Shown one piece after another: positions 4,095-11,724 of a DNA stretch of 64,000 nt. Each line of letters begins with the position of its first letter. The first letter of the stretch is position 1. A program made the position numbers and the translations under genes. The stretch covers positions 1 to 64,000 of IMG/VR virus record IMGVR_UViG_3300032268_000986, one strand, 5' to 3'. The notes beneath the pieces are model-generated. The model searched no databases, had not been told where the DNA came from, and saw only the letters and a list, made by a program, of their open reading frames with translations.

Positions 4095-4525
4095 CATACC
4101 AGTTTGCCAGAATTGATCTTGCCAAGACCAATTACGAAATAAAAGTCAAGTGGGAATACTTACGTGACCCAGACATTCCTCAGTTGAACAGCATCTACCG
4201 AGACTACTGCAAGTACAAGCATTTTGCCAGTGTCATGCCCATGTTTGACAGTCGTTACACTGACCCCATGACCGATGTCATAGGATATTACGATGCAGAT
4301 CGTCTGGTGGCATTTTCACTGATTCGACGCTACGATGACAAGCATGCTCTGTGCGACCAGTTTGCATGGAACTACAACAATCCACGACTGCGTTTGGGGA
4401 TTGAAACAATGAAAGCCGAGTGTGCTATCTACAAGGCACGGGGATTTGAATATCTGTATCTTGAACAAGCACACTTATACAAAGCCAGCATGGATGGCTT
4501 TGAAATACTAGGACCACTGGAGTAA
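4091..4525 (+). CDS. GNAT-fold protein resembling the C-terminal domain of arginyl/leucyl-tRNA-protein transferases (ATE_C/Bpt)
   Basis: GYYDADRLVAFS and RLGIETMKAECAIYKARGFEYLYL resemble the ATE C-terminal LG..S.L.EI..A...G..Y.YLG pattern. Confidence 0.55.
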   Translation: MTYQFARIDLAKTNYEIKVKWEYLRDPDIPQLNSIYRDYCKYKHFASVMPMFDSRYTDPMTDVIGYYDADRLVAFSLIRRYDDKHALCDQFAWNYNNPRLRLGIETMKAECAIYKARGFEYLYLEQAHLYKASMDGFEILGPLE

Positions 4526-4527
4526 TC

Positions 4528-4860
4528 ATGGATTTATACACAATTTGGGCAGACAAAGAAGGTGACATCTCAGACCTTGACTGGGTAAACGGAATGAAGA
4601 GTTTTTTTGATCACTTGGTATCCGAAGACCGCATGGTATCATACCGAATCACACGCTGCAAGATGGGATTTCGTAGCATAGCAGACATGCCGGAATGGAT
4701 GATACTCATGGAGTTTCGTGACATGGGACAAATGGATTCAGCATTTCGACGAGTAGCACCACTGGAAGGTGAACTGGAAGACAAACACCGATCATTCAAT
4801 CAGTTTGTGTCAGGCACAATTCAACATGCCTTGTTTAGAGATTGGCCAGATCAATTCTAA
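4528..4860 (+). CDS. DUF6614-like small alpha/beta-barrel protein
   Basis: MDLYTIW...YRITRCKMGF...EWMILMEFRDMGQMDSAF...ALFRDWPD; RBS GGAG upstream. Confidence 0.55.
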   Translation: MDLYTIWADKEGDISDLDWVNGMKSFFDHLVSEDRMVSYRITRCKMGFRSIADMPEWMILMEFRDMGQMDSAFRRVAPLEGELEDKHRSFNQFVSGTIQHALFRDWPDQF

Positions 4861-4869
4861 CACACTATC

Positions 4870-4934
4870 TAGATCTACTTCGTAGATCTATTGACTTCGC
4901 TTTGCTCGTCAATTACTTCTTCGAAGCAAAGCGA
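4870..4934. terminator. Hairpin cluster between convergent transcription units
   Basis: TAGATCTAC-TTC-GTAGATCTA (9-bp stem, 4870-4890) and CGCTTTGCT...AGCAAAGCG inverted repeat (4898-4933). Confidence 0.5.
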
Positions 4935-5320
4935 GAACTCAGTTATCATCTAGATTAAGCGGTCACACTTTGCCCGCACAGGGCAAAGATTGGCATCATC
5001 TGAGTAGCACAGCCACATAGCGTTACAACATTACAGAGGCGGTTGTCCGGTACCTCGAGTTGCGTCTTTATCACAACGGCAATTTGCACAACATACGCTA
5101 ACACATCGTACAAACCTGCTGCCCCACGGCAGCGTCTTTTTAGCTTTTAAGATTCTGTTCAAACAATCAAATCGCAGCATTTAGATAGCGATCGTCGTCC
5201 TGTCAAGGATAGTGATTGAGTACTTTTTGCAGCAAAAGATTTACCATCCCTGAGATCCGAGATCCAGGTTTAGGGCACACGAAGTTGACCTGTGCCAGTC
5301 GTAACTGCTTGATTAACTGC
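4935..5320 (-). ncRNA. Putative large structured non-coding RNA of unknown family, directly downstream of the GIY-YIG gene
   Basis: No long ORF; at least eight stems; G-U pairs form only on the minus strand; a loop is complementary to a downstream segment (possible pseudoknot). Confidence 0.6.
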
Positions 5321-5749
5321 CTAAATTTTGTTGATTATGTGACTGCCGTGTACACGAACTTGAATATGTCCGTTGTACCAGTCTCGTGATTCTAGCACTC
5401 TGCGTGAAAATTGTTCTCTTGCTTCGATATAGCTGCATTCTGATTTGGACTTGCAGTAATAAAGTATTTCTCGTTTGAAGTTGTCTTTGCCTTGTAGTTC
5501 CACATCCCGGGAGAGTTCTGGTGAGCTACCGTAGTAGTCGCGCCAATCACTATCCACCTTGGATCGAATCTTTTTCTTCTTCTTGCTGCCGTTTTTGAGT
5601 TTGACTGTGCGTTGAGATGTTTTAGAGAATTTTGCTAGTTTTTTGCCAATGTACATGCGACCTGTGGTGATGTTTGTGATTAGATACACAAAACCCACGC
5701 AGTCTTCGGGTAAAATATCAATTGCTTGATTGTTGTATAACCATGTCAT
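5321..5749 (-). CDS. Small GIY-YIG endonuclease (Seg-like catalytic domain, ~142 aa)
   Basis: GFVYLITN...MYIGKK, YYGSS, FKREIL, E-Q and terminal YN motifs; probable start MTWLY at 5749. Confidence 0.85.
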   Translation of the reverse strand: MTWLYNNQAIDILPEDCVGFVYLITNITTGRMYIGKKLAKFSKTSQRTVKLKNGSKKKKKIRSKVDSDWRDYYGSSPELSRDVELQGKDNFKREILYYCKSKSECSYIEAREQFSRRVLESRDWYNGHIQVRVHGSHIINKI

Positions 5750-5769
5750 AGAACATGTAGTTATCACTG

Positions 5770-6783
5770 CTACCACGAAGTTGCGTAATTTCTATCCACT
5801 ACCGAGCTTTTGCATTTTGTCTGACATTCCTGCCATTTAAATGTTTGAAACTCATTGGTCCAGTACGGATCTGCCAGTGCGTCTGTTAATGTTCTTGTGT
5901 TTAAATCAAAATTGTTTGAGATTTGCTGCCAGTCTGAATTGTGATTGTATCTGTTGGCCACCCAACAGCAGGGAAATAACCTGCCGCGAGCATCAATGTA
6001 CAATCCTTTGTTGCCTATTTTGCATAACGGAGTTACTCCGTTATGACTTGAAGTTTGATTGAATAGTTGTATGTTTGTGTTGGAAACAGGTTCTTCTGCT
6101 CCGTGTGCAGTAAATGCAGTTGTTTCACGTTCAAAACGATGTGTACTGCTGATATATTTCATGCTGGGTTGCAATGGATCGTCTACACCGTAAGATGGAT
6201 ACACACTGCCAAACTTGGTACTCTTGGTCAACTGAAAGCGATCAACACCCATTGACTGTGCAAACTCTTTCATGTGATCCAAGTGTTCTTCGTTGAACTT
6301 GAAAGCTATGGCAGCCCATACAATTTTGCAACGGCTTGATGCTCGTAGAGATGTCATGCCATTCACAATGCTATCATAGTCGCTGTTGACACGATACATG
6401 TTGTTGCTGGTGTTGTCATGCCCGTCTACACTAAAATGCACACTGTCATTGGAATCTAACACTGTTCCCAGTTCCGTCCACCAAGCGGTTTTCTTATGTG
6501 ACCCGTTGGTGACAACAACAATCTCTACAGGTCGGATGCTTTTGATGTGTTGGATAACCGGAATCAAGTCATGTGCATAGATGGGATCGCCATCGTCACC
6601 ACAGAATGTAATTTTTTCTACGTTGTCTTGTACAAATTCTGATGTGAAATTACGTTTGAAGAATTCCAAGTTCAGTTCTGTGTTGACCAGACTGTGGGGT
6701 ACTTCTTGTCGAGAACATCGGGGGCACCGCAAGGTACACTTGCTGGAAATCTCAATGTGAAAATGCCAAGTCGCTAGGGTCAT
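5770..6783 (-). CDS. Radical SAM protein with C-terminal SPASM/twitch domain
   Basis: CTLRCPRC, CGDDGDP, TNGS, and C-terminal C..GRLFPCC..CQTKC. Confidence 0.85.
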   Translation of the reverse strand: MTLATWHFHIEISSKCTLRCPRCSRQEVPHSLVNTELNLEFFKRNFTSEFVQDNVEKITFCGDDGDPIYAHDLIPVIQHIKSIRPVEIVVVTNGSHKKTAWWTELGTVLDSNDSVHFSVDGHDNTSNNMYRVNSDYDSIVNGMTSLRASSRCKIVWAAIAFKFNEEHLDHMKEFAQSMGVDRFQLTKSTKFGSVYPSYGVDDPLQPSMKYISSTHRFERETTAFTAHGAEEPVSNTNIQLFNQTSSHNGVTPLCKIGNKGLYIDARGRLFPCCWVANRYNHNSDWQQISNNFDLNTRTLTDALADPYWTNEFQTFKWQECQTKCKSSVVDRNYATSW

Positions 6784-8855
6784 GCAATTTCTACATCTGT
6801 GTTGTAACTGGTAAAGCCGTTTTCTTTGATGACTTTGAGAATGTTTTCCACACGCCCAGCTAACTCATCTCTGTGGCTCACTAGCCAAATACTCTTGTGG
6901 CGTTCTCGAGTCATCTTCTTGAGCAAGCCCAGGGCATTTTCTACACCTTGTGTGTCTAGGCCGTTGTCTATGAGTTCGTCAATGAACAACAAGTTGATGG
7001 GTGAGTATAAACTTTCCCACACGTCACGGAATGCCCAGCTCATGCTTAGGATCAATCGATTGCGTTCACCACGGCTCAAATTGTCAAAATCCAGCTCACG
7101 ACCCAGTTCCTCAATGCTAACACTCAAATCGTTCTGAAATTTCACAGTGTGCGGCAGGCCAATACGATCCAAGTAGTGGGTAAGACGTGCGTTTAGATAA
7201 CTCAAGTTCTGATCAATAATTTTCTTGCGCACAAACGAATCCTTGGAGGTCAACAGTTTGAGCAAGAATTCTTGATGTTCTTGTATACGGGTAAGTTCGT
7301 TAATGGTATCATAGCTGACCACTTGCAGTGCTTGTCGTTGCATGTCTGCAATTTGTTCAGTGTATGGATCAGTCTCCAAGGCCTTGCGCTCAATTTGATC
7401 TACCAGGCTGGCAACTCTACTGCGATGTTCAATGGCTTCTCGTTCGGTATCATAGTGTGTGCGCGGCTGTGTCCCCAACACAACTTCTGTATGCTCAGTT
7501 AACTGCTCGGCAAAAGGATTGATTTCTGCTTGCTTGTCTTCCCATACTTTTTTCAAGTTAGCAACATCGCCGCTGTGTCGGATTGCCTCAGCTTCAGTTT
7601 TGTACAGCGGCTTGGGTTTTACCGCGGCAACAAAAATTTCAACTTGCCTGAGTTCATTCCACTGATTTGTCAATGCAGTTGCATGTGCTTGAGCATCTTC
7701 AAGCATTTTTTCTTTGTCGGTCAGCACTCGAATATGTTGATCATCATGAAACTCTTGACCACATGCATAACACTTGTGATCCAGCAAGGATTCAATTTCT
7801 GCTGAAAGTTTTTTAACAAGTTTGTCTTCCTTGTCAATTTCTTTGGTCAGGCGTGCAAGTTCACGATCTCGATCTTCAAGCTCCTTGGACTTTTGTAGGT
7901 ACTCATTGAGTTGCCGCCATGTATCAAGTTCAGTTTCAATGTCGTACTGATTTTTGTCTAAATAAGCACGTCCGGCAGCATCAACATCGGCATCATGCTT
8001 TTGTTGCCAGGCTGTACTGCGAGCAACCAATGCAGTGTGTGTGTCCTTTTGCTGCTTCAGTGTGTTCCAAATTACCAAATCTTTGTGTGCAGAAAGTTCA
8101 GCCTCAATGTCCAGCGCACTGAGGTCATTGTATTCAGTCATGACTCGTTCAAGATCTTCACTGTGTTTTTTCTGCCACAGGGTTTGTCTGCGACGAAGCC
8201 CATCTATTTGTTCTTCTATTCTGGTGTTGGCTTCTTGCACTGCTCGGATACGAAACTCTTCCTGAGTAACAGCATCCTTGGTCTGGCGGTTTAATTCTTT
8301 GACACGATCAGCTTTTTCACTGAGCATGGTAATGCCCAACAGTTGTTCAATGATGGTGCGCTGGTCAAGGGCCTTGAGACTCAAAAACGGTTCGGTATAA
8401 GTGTTCAAGGCCAGCACATGTTTGAACATGTCATGACTCATGTTCATGATGCGTTCAATGGCATCTTGGGTTTCTCGACTGTCGCCCTGGGCTTCGTCAG
8501 TGGCAGACTTTTCTTCATTGTTGACATAGAATTTCAGCACATTGGGTTTGCGTCCGCGCTCAATTCGGTATTCAACACTGTTTACAGAAAAATCAAGACT
8601 GACCAGCATGCCTTTACCATTGGTCTTGTTCACAAGATTGTCCTTGCGAATGTTGCTCAAGGCATTGCCGTACAATGCGTAACTCAGAGCATTGATGATT
8701 GTGGTCTTACCAGTACCATTGCGACTGCCATCGCCTCCTAGGTCTAAATTTTCACCCAGCACCAGTGTGAGATCTTTGCGATCAAAATTAATACCTTGTG
8801 TGGCATTACCCACACTCATGAAGTTTCGAACAGTGAGATTTTTAATTTGAATCAT
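6780..8855 (-). CDS. gp46: Recombination endonuclease ATPase subunit (gp46/SbcC/Rad50-like)
   Basis: Walker A RNGTGKTT, CYAC zinc hook, LSRGE signature, Walker B LLFIDE, VSH H-loop. Confidence 0.95.
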   Translation of the reverse strand: MIQIKNLTVRNFMSVGNATQGINFDRKDLTLVLGENLDLGGDGSRNGTGKTTIINALSYALYGNALSNIRKDNLVNKTNGKGMLVSLDFSVNSVEYRIERGRKPNVLKFYVNNEEKSATDEAQGDSRETQDAIERIMNMSHDMFKHVLALNTYTEPFLSLKALDQRTIIEQLLGITMLSEKADRVKELNRQTKDAVTQEEFRIRAVQEANTRIEEQIDGLRRRQTLWQKKHSEDLERVMTEYNDLSALDIEAELSAHKDLVIWNTLKQQKDTHTALVARSTAWQQKHDADVDAAGRAYLDKNQYDIETELDTWRQLNEYLQKSKELEDRDRELARLTKEIDKEDKLVKKLSAEIESLLDHKCYACGQEFHDDQHIRVLTDKEKMLEDAQAHATALTNQWNELRQVEIFVAAVKPKPLYKTEAEAIRHSGDVANLKKVWEDKQAEINPFAEQLTEHTEVVLGTQPRTHYDTEREAIEHRSRVASLVDQIERKALETDPYTEQIADMQRQALQVVSYDTINELTRIQEHQEFLLKLLTSKDSFVRKKIIDQNLSYLNARLTHYLDRIGLPHTVKFQNDLSVSIEELGRELDFDNLSRGERNRLILSMSWAFRDVWESLYSPINLLFIDELIDNGLDTQGVENALGLLKKMTRERHKSIWLVSHRDELAGRVENILKVIKENGFTSYNTDVEIA

Positions 8856-8890
8856 GCAATATTGTTATCAGAGTATGAATACATTGTAGA

Positions 8891-8914
8891 TGATTGTGTT
8901 ATACAACACAATCA
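8891..8914. terminator. 10-bp inverted repeat between the inserted genes and gp46
   Basis: TGATTGTGTT-ATAC-AACACAATCA. Confidence 0.45.
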
Positions 8915-8927
8915 ATTAGGCCTGATA

Positions 8928-10328
8928 CTATCTGAGTTTGAATTTGATTCGAAAATGATTTCTCACATGAAACTCATTGAGAGTCATGTCGCATGCTCTA
9001 AAGTCACTGAGATTCATCTGATCTACATAATTTATTTGTACCAGTGGTGATAATTTGCTGAGTTCAGCATTGATCATATTGACTATGTCATCGGGCTGCT
9101 CAACGGTTTTATCGATCAACAAATAAACTCGATTCATTGTGGGGTCAGCCAAGAGATACACAAGAGACGGATCAGTTGTTTGTTTGACAATGTTGTCTAG
9201 ATCAGTGACCGAAAGAATAACGTCATTTATACGTAGGTATGAATTACGATGTCTGAACTCATACCCAGTATCGGTCAACTCAAACTCGTCGGGAAAAATC
9301 ACTGTGCCTTGATATTTGTTGCTGACTTGTAGTTTGTTGCCATTGACAAGTTTGACTTGATAAAAATCATCAATAGGAAATCCAAAATCCATGCAGTTGT
9401 GAGTGTCTGGAGAGTCTTTGGCAATTGTGTTGATAAACACCGGTGATGACATCTCCATGCAACCAAACAACGATGTAACTGAGTTGATATTTTTCTCTCT
9501 CATTAAATCAAGCCAATTCAGTTGATTGCCTTGCAGTGATAGTATGTCCACAGCCTTGGTAAACTTTTTGGCGTTCTGAATAAATCTCTCAGTGGTGATA
9601 CTATTGGGCATGGACATCTTGTTGATTCTTTCGCGCTCAACAAAGTCGGCAATTTGTGCTAGTTTATCAAAATTTAAAATAGCGCCATAGTGATGTTCAC
9701 ACACGTTCAATGATGGTAACAGCATGTTATTCAATCCTCCGCCATGGTGCGATCCATGCAGATGTAACATACGATCGTTGGGGTTAAACTTGTGTATGCC
9801 CACACATCGGTCCGACAATTCCCGACTGAACGCATGAGAATATTCCACAGACTTTGGCACTAGATCCGCTGATGCTGTCACTGCCTTGATCATGGCCAGG
9901 CGATCCGAGAAACCATGTGGCATGTGATCCATTGTGTTGTGTTTGGCAACATAATGGTGCCAAACATCCAGCTGTATCACGCAGCCGGTATGAGGTTGTT
10001 CTTCGTTGGCTTTCTCCTGGGAGTCTACCACTGTGGCAGTAAACGGTGCATGAAAAAGGCTGAAACTTGGATTTTGTAGAACATACGAAGCACCCAATTC
10101 CCAAATAGCAAACATTAAAGAAATCCATCTCAGGTCTCGGTGACCAATATTCAATGCAACTGTGGATCCTGGACCCACATTTGCTTGTTCGACCAAGATG
10201 TTTTTCCAGTGGTCAATGCTGGCTGAAATTTCAGCATAGTCAGAAACATGGTCAACATTGAAGTTGGAATCAACTTGATACCATTTGATGTTTTTGTTGA
10301 TATAGGTTCTGTCAATTAGTTTATTCAT
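8928..10328 (-). CDS. Degenerate adenylate-forming (ANL superfamily) protein
   Basis: Paralogous to the neighbouring gene; remnants TASADLVPKSVEYSH, HHGGG and FGCMEM; probable start MNKLIDR at 10328. Confidence 0.6.
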   Translation of the reverse strand: MNKLIDRTYINKNIKWYQVDSNFNVDHVSDYAEISASIDHWKNILVEQANVGPGSTVALNIGHRDLRWISLMFAIWELGASYVLQNPSFSLFHAPFTATVVDSQEKANEEQPHTGCVIQLDVWHHYVAKHNTMDHMPHGFSDRLAMIKAVTASADLVPKSVEYSHAFSRELSDRCVGIHKFNPNDRMLHLHGSHHGGGLNNMLLPSLNVCEHHYGAILNFDKLAQIADFVERERINKMSMPNSITTERFIQNAKKFTKAVDILSLQGNQLNWLDLMREKNINSVTSLFGCMEMSSPVFINTIAKDSPDTHNCMDFGFPIDDFYQVKLVNGNKLQVSNKYQGTVIFPDEFELTDTGYEFRHRNSYLRINDVILSVTDLDNIVKQTTDPSLVYLLADPTMNRVYLLIDKTVEQPDDIVNMINAELSKLSPLVQINYVDQMNLSDFRACDMTLNEFHVRNHFRIKFKLR

Positions 10329-11724
10329 CTGATTCCTTGGCAAGGTTAAATTTGTCAATAAAATATCTCTTTACCTGAGATAAGTTAAATTTATGTGAGT
10401 TGATAAATGTAGTGATATCAACCAAGCTCACATGATCAAGGCACAACCCGTCAGCAATCTTGGCCAAGTCAGCATTGATCTTGCTTGCTAGTTGGTTGAC
10501 TTGATCTTGGGAATACCGTTGGTCAACCAACAAGCAAACTCTGTCAGAGACTGCAATTATACACATCAAACTGGGATTTCCATGCACAAACACACACTGT
10601 TCTATTGCGTTCCATGGAACATCCTGTCCCTGTAGTCGGATATTTTTATCTCGATTACCATACAGTAGATTACCTGCATGATCCTGTACAAAATAATCCT
10701 GGATCACGTGCGATTTAACTTCCAGCAAGGGGTGCGACACTCGAAGATTGTTTTGGTCAGTTAACTCGATTGTGTAAAAATTATCCAGTGGCTGTCCAAA
10801 GTTCATTGGAGAATAACTGTCATCAGTTTGTTGAGTAATTTCGTTGGCCAGTACCGGGGTGAACACTTCCATTGCACCATAACTGGTGCGTATTGACTGA
10901 ACATTTTTTTCTTGAATCAACTTGATCCAGTTGGATTGATTTGCCAGTAACTGAAATATTTTAACAGTGTGGTTGAATCGTGGAGCATGAGTCAAGAACA
11001 ATTCTATAGACAACGGATGCGGCAGCATGATCACATTGATTTTGTGATTACTGACATATTGAGCAAGTTCGGCCATGCGGTCAGCCACAAACGGTAGACT
11101 GTGGACATGCTCAAATTGCGCAAGAACTGGCAATAAATGAGCCAGTACCACGTTGTGTGCGCCGCCATGTACCAACAATGCGCTTTCCAGCCCAGGTTGG
11201 TCCAATCCCAGTGCTGAGATATTGCGCTGACCCAATGCATACATGAACTCATGTGAGTGATTGCCCTTGGTTGGGATTCCGGTAGAACCCGACGAATTGA
11301 ATCCCAATACAGAATCAGTGGGCTGACATATTGCCGCAGTGTCGGCCGCAACATGGCTGTCATGATCAAGTTTGCCAGACAGATAATGCAATGCATGCGG
11401 TTTTAGTGTCTCTGCAGAGGCAGAGTCTGACACTATCACATGCCATGGCGCCCATAGGTCTGGGTAGCTTGGATGGAACGCAGTTTGTTTCCCCCCAAGT
11501 TCCCAGTTGGCCACAGTAACGGCCAGCCAATTGATATCTCTAATTTCAAAGTTTAATAAAATCTGGCGGCCACGTCCGTGACCATGTTGATGTTCAAGCA
11601 CATGTTTCCACTGATTTATACAACGATCAATGTCGTCGCGAGTGTGTACTTGAACATCATCAAGAGTTCCAGAATGCCACGACAGTTCTGGATTTAAAAA
11701 CTTTCTGTCTAGCACAGTTTTCAT
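10321..11724 (-). CDS. AMP-binding / acyl-CoA-synthetase-like adenylate-forming enzyme
   Basis: P-loop NSSGSTGIPTKGNHSH, YGAME motif, QD..GNLLYGNR hinge. Confidence 0.75.
   Translation of the reverse strand: MKTVLDRKFLNPELSWHSGTLDDVQVHTRDDIDRCINQWKHVLEHQHGHGRGRQILLNFEIRDINWLAVTVANWELGGKQTAFHPSYPDLWAPWHVIVSDSASAETLKPHALHYLSGKLDHDSHVAADTAAICQPTDSVLGFNSSGSTGIPTKGNHSHEFMYALGQRNISALGLDQPGLESALLVHGGAHNVVLAHLLPVLAQFEHVHSLPFVADRMAELAQYVSNHKINVIMLPHPLSIELFLTHAPRFNHTVKIFQLLANQSNWIKLIQEKNVQSIRTSYGAMEVFTPVLANEITQQTDDSYSPMNFGQPLDNFYTIELTDQNNLRVSHPLLEVKSHVIQDYFVQDHAGNLLYGNRDKNIRLQGQDVPWNAIEQCVFVHGNPSLMCIIAVSDRVCLLVDQRYSQDQVNQLASKINADLAKIADGLCLDHVSLVDITTFINSHKFNLSQVKRYFIDKFNLAKESDE

What the first reader, a model, noticed from the sequence alone, without database searches (positions are those of the whole stretch)
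4935..5749. Minimal GIY-YIG nuclease followed immediately by a ~400-nt ornate RNA: candidate nuclease-RNA system
Seen in sequence: genes here normally abut or overlap, yet 460 nt after the GIY-YIG stop are non-coding and almost continuously paired on the minus strand. Stems are GGCACA/UGUGCC (5274-5296), CCUGGAUC/GAUCUCAGG (5249-5268), CAAUCA/UGAUUG enclosing AUCGC/GCGAU, GCUGCC-GUGG-GGCAGC (5118-5133), a 15-bp G-U-rich stem (5081-5116), GUUGUG/CGCAAC (5059-5077), GAGGU/GCCUC (5036-5056), CUUUGCCC/GGGCAAAG (4968-4988) and CUCAG/CUGAG. The G-U pairs become A-C mismatches on the plus strand, so the structure is on the same strand as the nuclease gene. The protein is only a catalytic domain plus a very basic insert (KLKNGSKKKKKIRSK) and has no separate DNA-binding domain. 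Established: GIY-YIG homing enzymes such as I-TevI use C-terminal DNA-binding domains, and compact nucleases such as IscB and TnpB take specificity from an adjacent structured RNA. Inference: the protein and RNA form a ribonucleoprotein (RNA-guided or RNA-scaffolded nuclease), or the RNA is a new ribozyme or large ncRNA class.
Basis: partly seen in the sequence, partly recalled or inferred. Interest (0 to 1): 0.85.

Follow-up and report, generated by a model that had tools for sequence, protein, structure and literature searches.

The report
Known phage RNA, larger than catalogued
The 460 non-coding bases after the small nuclease gene encode a real, heavily folded RNA of about 450 bases whose first third is already catalogued (Rfam Polynucleobacter-1, function unknown), and it looks like a gene in its own right, not a guide for the nuclease.

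Summary
A 142-aa Seg-type GIY-YIG protein (5321-5749, minus strand) is followed by about 450 nt of non-coding, strongly covarying RNA structure on the same strand.

The RNA is not new. Bases 5161-5300 match Rfam RF01718 (Polynucleobacter-1) at 113.9 bits. Weinberg et al. 2010 already placed this motif downstream of PSSM2_218-like genes, the same protein family (40% identical here).

New here:
- The RNA is three times longer than the Rfam model.
- It lies in freshwater T4-like phages, at the end of the Rad50 (gp46) operon.
- Its 3' domain is the universal core, and the 5' domain comes in at least three forms.
- It has at least two pseudoknots.
- Two 7-nt boxes flanking an invariant hairpin are identical to each other in 126 of 128 RNAs, across nine variants.

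The nuclease-RNA pairing is near-constant inside this one syntenic phage clade, but it breaks outside it:
- Six Polynucleobacter-type bacterial loci carry the RNA with no nuclease nearby.
- Four cultured T4-like phages with the nuclease lack the RNA.
- Other genes can sit between the two.
- A PD-(D/E)XK nuclease sometimes replaces the GIY-YIG.
- No guide-like segment exists.

An RNA-guided nuclease is therefore not supported. The RNA's function remains unknown.

The parts
5321..5749 (-). 142-aa Seg-type GIY-YIG protein made of the catalytic domain only, with a basic beta-hairpin arm. It belongs to phrog_447 and is a homologue of PSSM2_218.
   Evidence: PF19835 E 2.9e-33. phrog_447 E 1e-37. 40% identical to P-SSM2 PSSM2_218. 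AlphaFold model pLDDT 87. BFVD matches to SegE-like GIY-YIG proteins, best TM 0.82.
4869..5312 (-). Full-length structured RNA of about 445 nt, in three domains: D1, D2 and D3.
   Evidence: blastn and nhmmer find conservation over the whole stretch in more than 150 viral loci. Covariation is shown.
5161..5300 (-). Domain 1, a match to Rfam RF01718 Polynucleobacter-1 RNA over model positions 1-141.
   Evidence: 113.9 bits against a gathering score of 37, E 6e-24.
5018..5144 (-). Domain 2: hairpin 5118-5133, long G-U-rich hairpin 5082-5115, helix 5063-5059/5029-5025 and the nearly invariant hairpin GAGGUACCGGACAACCGCCUC.
   Evidence: nhmmer D2. Helices with compensatory changes.
5095..5099 (-). 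Pseudoknot PK1, 5' strand. This hairpin loop pairs with 5019-5023.
   Evidence: All five pairs covary, for example 5096-5022 is G-C in 92 and A-U in 34 sequences.
5019..5023 (-). Pseudoknot PK1, 3' strand.
5073..5077 (-). Pseudoknot PK2. GUUGU pairs with the loop ACAAC at 5042-5046.
   Evidence: Five Watson-Crick pairs, three of which vary in step.
4869..5017 (-). Domain 3, the universal 3' core. It is present in all three 5'-domain types and, in diverged form, in the bacterial versions.
   Evidence: nhmmer D3 hits where D1 and D2 are absent. Alignments.
4993..5006 (-). Box R1 (UACUCAGAUGAUGC).
   Evidence: The 7-mer core 5001-4995 is identical to the R2 core in 126 of 128 RNAs, across 9 variants.
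4943..4956 (-). Box R2 (AAUCUAGAUGAUAA), 50 nt downstream of R1.
4968..4988 (-). Nearly invariant hairpin CUUUGCCC-N5-GGGCAAAG between the two boxes, followed by UGUGAC.
   Evidence: Compensatory changes between the 5'-domain types.
4890..4913 (-). Hairpin UUGAC...GUCAA with the loop GAGCnAnAGCGAA. The loop may pair with 4924-4934 to form a pseudoknot.
   Evidence: Covariation at 4909-4894 and 4908-4895. The loop pairing is only an inference from the sequence.
4871..4889 (-). Terminal hairpin of 8 bp. No U-run follows it.
   Evidence: All 8 pairs show compensatory changes. No terminator is called on the minus strand.
5117..5144 (+). Terminator-like hairpin plus T-run on the opposite strand, inside the RNA gene.
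5770..6783 (-). Radical SAM/SPASM gene upstream in the same operon. It is optional among relatives.
6780..8855 (-). Rad50-like (gp46-type) gene, the conserved anchor of the operon that ends with the RNA.
4528..4860 (+). Convergent DUF6614 gene. It bounds the RNA on its 3' side.

Best explanation
Shown: window 4869-5312 (minus strand) encodes a full-length member, about 445 nt, of the Polynucleobacter-1 RNA family (RF01718). Rfam models only the first 141 nt of it. The RNA is a compact fold with several helices and at least two pseudoknots. Its 3' domain is the conserved core, and its 5' domain is exchangeable (three forms seen).

Shown: the RNA is carried by one clade of freshwater T4-like phages. 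There it is always the last element of the Rad50 (gp46) transcription unit, just before the convergent baseplate module. It is also carried by Polynucleobacter-type Burkholderiales, as a stand-alone gene in an intergenic region, in three of six loci close to a tyrosine recombinase gene.

Inferred: the RNA is an autonomous, trans-acting RNA gene. In the phage it is probably co-transcribed with whichever ORF precedes it, because no shared promoter lies upstream of it in the different contexts. Its adjacency to the GIY-YIG gene is shared synteny within one clade, not an obligate partnership. The GIY-YIG protein is this clade's copy of a small Seg-type nuclease that is conserved across T4-like phages and works without this RNA elsewhere.

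Mechanism (inferred, low confidence): the 3' core presents two identical single-stranded boxes on either side of an invariant hairpin. The two boxes change together in evolution. This fits an RNA that binds two copies, or a dimer, of one sequence-specific partner encoded elsewhere, acting as a scaffold or decoy. It also fits an RNA that is cut at both boxes by one enzyme.
For: - Rfam match of 113.9 bits.
- Conservation of the whole 450 nt in more than 150 loci, and covariation above every shuffle.
- Pseudoknots with covarying pairs.
- D3 is present where D1 and D2 are replaced.
- Fixed synteny Rad50 -> [radical SAM] -> GIY-YIG -> [0-2 ORFs] -> RNA, then the convergent genes.
- The RNA starts within about 20 nt of the stop codon of whichever gene precedes it, and no common upstream motif is seen.
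- Six bacterial loci hold RF01718 at 70-104 bits with no GIY-YIG or PD-(D/E)XK hit better than E 0.8. The RNA there is flanked by genes on the other strand, follows AT-rich sequence in which I read possible -35/-10 elements by eye (not scanned), and has the same overall architecture.
- GIY-YIG homologues occur in 508 cultured phage records. Four records that were scanned carry no RNA, and the 1.6-kb query spanning the RNA found nothing in 50,697 phage records.
- The twin boxes are identical in 126 of 128 RNAs.
Against: Inside the phage clade the pairing is nearly perfect: 77 of 77 protein-seeded loci and 105 of 106 RNA-seeded loci. The one recurrent replacement of the GIY-YIG is another nuclease, PF24608. 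Pure synteny does not predict that.

No transcript data are available. The partner for the twin boxes is unknown. No complementary or repeated copy of the box was found within about 8 kb.

All phage loci come from one clade, so the counts are not independent. Autonomy rests on bacterial loci of only about 8 kb.
Confidence: 0.55

Rival explanations
1. Freestanding homing-type nucleases parked beside a conserved RNA gene. The RNA gene is the constant feature. Seg-type GIY-YIG genes, and occasionally PD-(D/E)XK genes, sit next to it because the highly conserved RNA gene, or its twin boxes, holds their DNA target. T4 SegB in the tRNA cluster is the model for this arrangement (established knowledge).
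For: - Two unrelated nuclease folds occupy the same slot directly upstream of the RNA.
- The protein's closest structural relatives are Seg-like homing endonucleases.
- In cyanophages and Melnitz the homologue follows nrdB. nrdB is a classic homing-endonuclease hot spot in T4 (own knowledge).
- The RNA exists without the nuclease in bacteria.
Against: - The protein lacks the C-terminal DNA-binding domain of Seg and I-TevI enzymes.
- It is present and intact in 77 of 77 and 105 of 106 loci instead of being sporadic.
- Identities of 52-94% track the divergence of the phages.
- It is close to universal in cyanomyovirus records.
- No locus was found with Rad50 -> RNA and no nuclease.
Confidence: 0.15
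2. The GIY-YIG protein (or its PD-(D/E)XK substitute) and the RNA form a ribonucleoprotein in which the RNA scaffolds, targets or restrains the nuclease. Restraint would resemble a type III toxin-antitoxin pair.
For: - Near-perfect adjacency on the same strand in the phage clade.
- The protein has only a catalytic domain plus a basic beta-hairpin arm.
- When the GIY-YIG is missing, another nuclease takes its place.
- The twin boxes could be two binding or cleavage sites.
Against: - The RNA occurs without a nuclease in bacteria.
- The protein family occurs without the RNA in the cultured T4-like phages that were scanned.
- Genes are inserted between the two in about 15 of 77 loci.
- No guide-like hypervariable segment is present; the variable parts are A-rich linkers and loop insertions.
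- The longer basic insert is not linked to the RNA.
- There is no Rfam match to HEARO or other nuclease-associated RNAs.
Confidence: 0.12
3. A cis-acting 3'-UTR element. The structure protects or terminates the Rad50-operon transcript at the convergent junction and has no function in trans.
For: - The RNA is always the last element of the operon, whatever gene precedes it.
- It sits at a convergent junction.
- A terminator-like hairpin for the opposite strand lies inside it.
Against: - About 450 nt, with pseudoknots and invariant single-stranded stretches, is far more than a stabiliser needs.
- No U-run follows the last hairpin.
- The bacterial version is a stand-alone gene antisense to both of its neighbours.
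Confidence: 0.1
4. A ribozyme or processing substrate. The RNA is cut, by itself or by one enzyme, at both identical boxes. This releases or splices out the 50-nt hairpin unit.
For: - Two boxes are kept identical around an invariant hairpin.
- Conserved unpaired nucleotides and pseudoknots are typical of catalytic RNAs.
Against: - No match to any ribozyme family in Rfam at E up to 10.
- Nothing in the sequence shows cleavage.
- Identity at non-essential positions of the boxes is not needed for cleavage by a fixed active site.
Confidence: 0.05

Closest known systems
Polynucleobacter-1 RNA motif (Rfam RF01718; Weinberg et al. 2010, PMC2864571)
   Same: Window 5161-5300 matches the whole model at 113.9 bits. 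The paper's supplement already says that most examples lie downstream of GOS11034 genes with possible homology to PSSM2_218, and that protein is 40% identical to the one here. The raw alignment in the supplement also carries part of the 3' extension.
   Different: - Rfam models 141 nt, whereas the conserved RNA is about 445 nt.
- The paper found no example in a purified phage. Here the RNA is in T4-like viral contigs.
- The upstream gene was not named as a GIY-YIG nuclease.
- The universal 3' core, the alternative 5' domains, the pseudoknots and the twin boxes are not described there.
HEARO / IscB omega-RNA and TnpB omega-RNA (OMEGA RNA-guided nucleases)
   Same: A compact nuclease gene lies next to a large structured RNA on the same strand.
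   Different: - There is no guide segment.
- The RNA and the nuclease occur apart from each other.
- The nuclease fold is different (GIY-YIG, not RuvC/HNH).
- No transposon ends are present.
- There is no Rfam match.
T4 Seg homing endonucleases (SegA-G), in particular SegB in the tRNA gene cluster
   Same: The catalytic domain is Seg-type GIY-YIG. The gene is freestanding in a T4-like phage and lies next to a gene for a structured RNA.
   Different: There is no DNA-binding domain, the gene is fixed instead of sporadic, and cleavage was not tested.
GOLLD and ROOL large ornate RNAs
   Same: These are also large, intricately folded RNAs of unknown function that are often carried by phages or prophages (own knowledge; bioRxiv 10.1101/2024.12.08.627333 appeared in a search, and only its abstract was seen).
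   Different: There is no sequence or structure match. This RNA is smaller, and nothing is known about whether it forms oligomers.
Type III toxin-antitoxin systems (ToxIN)
   Same: A nuclease gene lies beside a structured RNA. Phages are known to carry look-alikes of host antitoxin RNAs (own knowledge), and here both phages and a likely host lineage carry the RNA.
   Different: The RNA is not a tandem repeat array, it lies downstream of the nuclease and not upstream, and the bacterial copies have no adjacent nuclease.

Membership tests
Rfam RF01718 Polynucleobacter-1 RNA | Score at or above the family's gathering threshold over the full covariance model | tested here: met
   113.9 bits against 37, model positions 1-141 of 141, E 5.8e-24.
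Rfam RF01718 Polynucleobacter-1 RNA | Consensus helices kept through compensatory changes in relatives | tested here: met
   D1 helices 5295-5291/5279-5275, 5218-5213/5169-5164 and 5193-5188/5175-5170 each have 4-5 pairs with double changes.
Rfam RF01718 Polynucleobacter-1 RNA | Gene context reported by its authors: downstream of GOS11034 / PSSM2_218-like genes | tested here: met
   The upstream protein is 40% identical to PSSM2_218, E 1e-20.
GIY-YIG nucleases, Seg type (PF19835) | Profile match above the curated cut-off | tested here: met
   PF19835 scores 115 bits against a cut-off of 25. The general PF01541 model scores only 17.3 bits, below its cut-off.
GIY-YIG nucleases, Seg type (PF19835) | GIY and YIG motifs plus conserved Arg, Glu and Asn | tested here: inconclusive
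   GFVY (19-22), YIG (33-35), R93, E109 and N126 are invariant, and E94 is nearly invariant, in 26 relatives. They were not assigned to catalytic roles by superposition on a solved structure.
GIY-YIG nucleases, Seg type (PF19835) | Fold match to GIY-YIG structures | tested here: inconclusive
   No PDB match with E below 0.2. Among predicted viral structures (BFVD), 77 hits have E of 1e-3 or less, mostly SegE-like or Seg homing endonucleases among the top 50 listed, best TM 0.82.
Homing endonucleases of the Seg / I-TevI kind | Separate C-terminal DNA-binding domain | tested here: not met
   The 142-aa protein is covered end to end by the catalytic-domain profile. Relatives are 131-143 aa.
Homing endonucleases of the Seg / I-TevI kind | Sporadic presence among close relatives, with frequent decay | tested here: not met
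   The gene is present and full length in 77 of 77 and 105 of 106 informative loci, in a fixed position.
RNA-guided nucleases (IscB/TnpB with omega-RNA) | Nuclease and RNA always occur together | tested here: not met
   The RNA occurs without a nuclease in six bacterial loci. The nuclease occurs without the RNA in the cultured phages that were scanned.
RNA-guided nucleases (IscB/TnpB with omega-RNA) | Hypervariable guide segment at one end of a conserved scaffold | tested here: not met
   Both ends are conserved helices. The variable parts are loop insertions and A-rich linkers.
RNA-guided nucleases (IscB/TnpB with omega-RNA) | Physical ribonucleoprotein with RNA-dependent targeting | not testable with these tools
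   This needs biochemistry.
Type III toxin-antitoxin | RNA antitoxin built of tandem direct repeats upstream of the toxin gene | tested here: not met
   There are only two 14-nt boxes, 50 nt apart, and the RNA lies downstream of the nuclease.
Known ribozymes and large RNAs in Rfam (group I/II introns, HEARO, GOLLD, ROOL, self-cleavers) | Covariance-model match | tested here: not met
   In 4700-5500, at E up to 10, only RF01718 scores above chance.

The most novel reading that the evidence does not exclude
The Polynucleobacter-1 RNA is in fact a large, ornate class of RNAs of about 450 nt, with a modular 5' domain and a pseudo-symmetric 3' core. Its two co-evolving boxes would be the recognition or cleavage sites of a small domain-only nuclease (GIY-YIG or PD-(D/E)XK in phages, an unlinked enzyme in bacteria). 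That would make it a nuclease-RNA system of a kind not yet described.
Probability: 0.1. Interest if true: 0.8.

Novelty: new member of a known kind. Interest (0 to 1): 0.4.

Why it matters
This result removes a tempting but unsupported claim of an RNA-guided GIY-YIG nuclease.

It also upgrades a neglected Rfam entry. A 141-nt motif of unknown function turns out to be the 5' third of an RNA of about 450 nt with multiple pseudoknots. The RNA is near-constant in the sampled loci of a clade of uncultured freshwater T4-like phages, and it is shared with Polynucleobacter-type bacteria.

Few large structured RNAs remain without a function. This one comes with a concrete handle for experiments: two boxes that are kept identical through nine sequence variants.

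The work also shows that the product name 'NAD synthetase', given to homologues of this protein in many of the cyanophage and other phage records listed, is a misannotation of a Seg-type GIY-YIG domain protein.

Tried and rejected
- tRNA/tmRNA scan of the window: none found.
- blastn of 4400-6000 against 50,697 cultured phage records: no match.
- phmmer of the protein against PDB sequences: only chance hits, and no T4 EndoII or I-TevI. Foldseek against the PDB: nothing.
- A partner for the twin boxes was looked for and not found:
  - No consistent complementary 8-mer within the loci.
  - A weak, all-wobble match to the invariant UGUUUGAA at about 5160 does not explain the identity at the other box positions.
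  - No enrichment of a phage's own box variant in its flanking DNA.
  - Antiparallel pairing of the two boxes, in either register, does not predict same-index identity. It is broken in L117 and in the type C RNAs.
- A rolling-template or endless-ORF reading of the 50-nt unit was rejected, because stop codons occur on both strands and the unit length varies (reasoning from the sequence).
- A shared protein partner in phage and bacterial contexts was looked for. The phage loci have no DUF6641 or integrase homologue.
- Literature searches for RF01718 or Polynucleobacter-1 returned only the 2010 paper. Two recent large-scale ncRNA papers hold nothing relevant.
- I did not use the count of structure pairs, because it needs a typed structure string of more than 500 characters. 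The same test was scripted instead.
Full report
WHAT IS THERE

The window is part of a T4-like phage contig, IMGVR_UViG_3300032268_000986, 342,865 bp. Around the finding, the minus strand carries a Rad50-like gene (6780-8855), a radical SAM/SPASM gene (5770-6783) and a 142-aa ORF (5321-5749). The plus strand carries a T4 baseplate-family gene, two small ORFs and a DUF6614 gene that ends at 4860. The 460 nt in question therefore lie at a convergent junction.

The 142-aa protein matches PF19835 (SegE_GIY-YIG) over the whole profile and has nothing else (E 2.9e-33). It also matches phrog_447. An AlphaFold model (pLDDT 87) finds SegE-like and Seg homing endonucleases among predicted viral structures, with a best TM of 0.82 and 77 hits at E of 1e-3 or less. 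It finds no solved structure.

THE RNA IS REAL AND PARTLY KNOWN

A covariance-model scan puts window 5161-5300 (minus strand) in Rfam RF01718, Polynucleobacter-1 RNA. The score is 113.9 bits against a threshold of 37, over the full model. Nothing else in 4700-5500 scores above chance.

The supplement of the founding paper (Weinberg et al. 2010, PMC2864571) makes three relevant statements:
- Most examples lie downstream of GOS11034 genes with possible homology to PSSM2_218 of cyanophage P-SSM2.
- None was found in a purified phage.
- The 3' half is not always detected.

PSSM2_218 is 40% identical to the protein here (E 1e-20).

EXTENT AND STRUCTURE

Relatives of the protein in IMG/VR number at least 548, of which 80 were fetched. 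They are followed by sequence 67-97% identical to the whole 460-nt stretch. The RNA is thus about 445 nt, three times the length of the Rfam model.

In 22 full-length copies, RNAalifold predicts 101 pairs, 36 of them with compensatory double changes. In 117 non-redundant copies out of 128 unique ones, 109 pairs are 93.4% canonical, against 80.8% (maximum 81.4%) in 200 shuffles. Of these, 63 pairs carry double changes, against 42 (maximum 47) in the shuffles. G-U pairs (7.6%) far exceed A-C pairs (1.5%), which fixes the strand as the minus strand.

Mutual-information analysis adds three long-range features:
- a helix 5063-5059/5029-5025;
- a pseudoknot between the loop 5099-5095 and 5023-5019, in which all five pairs covary;
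- a second pseudoknot, 5077-5073/5046-5042.

The stem CUCAG/CUGAG is peculiar to this window and its closest relative. The other seven stems stand.

MODULAR BUILD

Profile searches with three sub-alignments (D1 is the Rfam part, D2 the middle, D3 the 3' part) show that D3 is found nearly everywhere, including where D1 and D2 are not. Alignments reveal at least three forms of the 5' region:
- Type A is the Rfam form.
- Type B is seen in, for example, L036, L046, L080, L209 and L212.
- Type C is seen in L020, L028, L053 and L068.

All three are non-coding, and all are joined to the same 3' core, with compensatory changes in its hairpins. The bacterial versions have the same overall plan over about 460 nt.

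THE TWIN BOXES (UNEXPLAINED)

In D3, two boxes lie 50 nt apart: R1 at 5006-4993 and R2 at 4956-4943. They flank the nearly invariant hairpin CUUUGCCC-N5-GGGCAAAG followed by UGUGAC.

The 7-mer cores of the two boxes are identical to each other in 126 of 128 unique RNAs, although nine variants occur (GGAUGAA, GGAUGAU, AGAUAAU, GGAUAAU and others). The rule also holds in type B and in type C (both boxes read CACAUGAA), and in bacteria (both read AGCGAAAG).

Phages whose GIY-YIG proteins are 93-97% identical already differ in box variant in 12 of 46 pairs, and always in both boxes. Covariation of this same-position kind is not base pairing between the boxes. No complementary element and no genome-wide use of the motif was found. 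It points to one sequence-specific partner that reads both boxes, or to some process that copies one box from the other.

IS THE NUCLEASE TIED TO THE RNA?

Inside the phage clade, almost always:
- All 77 protein-seeded loci with enough flank have the RNA downstream.
- Of 106 informative loci found with an RNA-only pattern, 105 have the GIY-YIG gene upstream on the same strand, at 52-94% identity.

These loci all share one gene order: Rad50, sometimes radical SAM, GIY-YIG, RNA, then the convergent genes and the baseplate gene. The counts are therefore not independent.

The link fails in several ways:
- In about 15 of 77 loci, one or two other ORFs lie between the GIY-YIG gene and the RNA. The RNA still begins within about 20 nt of the last stop codon, with no shared upstream motif.
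- In L114 and L212-216 the GIY-YIG gene is absent and a PF24608 PD-(D/E)XK nuclease stands in its place. In L114 this nuclease ends 20 nt before the RNA.
- Homologues of the protein occur in 508 cultured phage records, mostly cyanomyoviruses. In Melnitz, one cyanophage and P-SSM2 the gene lies downstream of nrdB. Many listed records name the product 'NAD synthetase'. The four records that were scanned have no RF01718 match. The 1.6-kb query spanning the RNA finds nothing in the cultured-phage collection.
- Six loci from Polynucleobacter and related Burkholderiales carry RF01718 at 70-104 bits, with no GIY-YIG or PD-(D/E)XK gene in about 8 kb. The RNA there is antisense to both neighbours and is transcribed divergently from a DUF6641 gene. 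In three of the six loci it is close to a 188-aa tyrosine recombinase gene.
- The phage loci have no DUF6641 or recombinase homologue, so no adjacent protein is common to the two settings.
- The longer basic insert is not linked to the RNA, because the short form is equally RNA-associated.
- No guide-like segment exists.

VERDICT

The RNA is a member of a known but uncharacterised family, and the RNA-guided-nuclease reading is not supported.

The most likely account is an autonomous large structured RNA. In this phage clade it rides at the tail of the Rad50 operon, next to a conserved Seg-type nuclease that works without it elsewhere.

Two facts keep a functional link alive at low probability: the near-perfect adjacency within the clade, and the replacement of one nuclease by another. 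A homing-type nuclease that targets the conserved RNA gene is the main rival.

What the RNA does is unknown. The twin boxes are the best lead.

Noticed in passing
window 4943-4956 and 4993-5006 (minus strand); also L001-L221: Two boxes 50 nt apart keep identical 7-mer cores in 126 of 128 RNAs across nine variants. The same holds in the type B and type C RNAs and in the bacterial RNAs. This is same-position identity covariation, not pairing.
   Followed up: partly
window 5117-5144 (+ strand): A terminator-like hairpin plus T-run lies on the strand opposite the RNA, inside the RNA gene. It could end the convergent baseplate-side transcripts about 260 nt past the DUF6614 stop.
   Followed up: no
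L114 8819-9385; L212 11725-12240 (minus strand): A PF24608 'phage putative PDDEXK endonuclease' occupies the slot of the GIY-YIG gene upstream of the RNA. No GIY-YIG gene is present in these loci.
   Followed up: partly
L036, L046, L080, L209, L212 (type B); L020, L028, L053, L068 (type C): Alternative non-coding 5' domains, unrelated to the Rfam model, are joined to the same 3' core. Rfam RF01718 did not hit any of the type B and type C loci scanned with it.
   Followed up: partly
L223, L224, L225, L227, L231, L234 (Polynucleobacter and relatives): The bacterial copies of the RNA are always transcribed divergently from a 145-aa DUF6641 gene. In three loci they lie about 0.4-1 kb from a 188-aa tyrosine recombinase gene, which suggests a mobile island.
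   Followed up: partly
NC_006883 PSSM2_218; NC_041997, NC_028945, MT408532 and many other phage records: Homologues of this Seg-type GIY-YIG domain protein (phrog_447) are annotated 'NAD synthetase' in many cultured phage genomes. Nothing in the sequence supports that name.
   Followed up: partly
L029 3429-4226; L056 3426-4451; L077 3439-5576: The slot between the GIY-YIG gene and the RNA accepts cargo: a 265-aa ORF, a 341-aa ORF with no Pfam match, or two ORFs of 365 and 347 aa whose sequences look like radical SAM proteins (not scanned against Pfam). Paralogue-like weak matches to the first two occur at window 48.8-63.6 kb.
   Followed up: no
window 5770-11724 (minus strand): Beside the Rad50-like gene lie a radical SAM/SPASM gene and two ORFs with AMP-binding-domain hits, the second only weak. 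That is an unusual metabolic cluster for a replication-recombination module. There is no tRNA gene in the whole 64-kb window.
   Followed up: no
protein residues 49-54 of window 5321-5749: A 6-aa indel (VKLKNG) lies in the basic beta-hairpin arm and splits the phage proteins into long and short forms. Both forms are followed by the RNA.
   Followed up: yes
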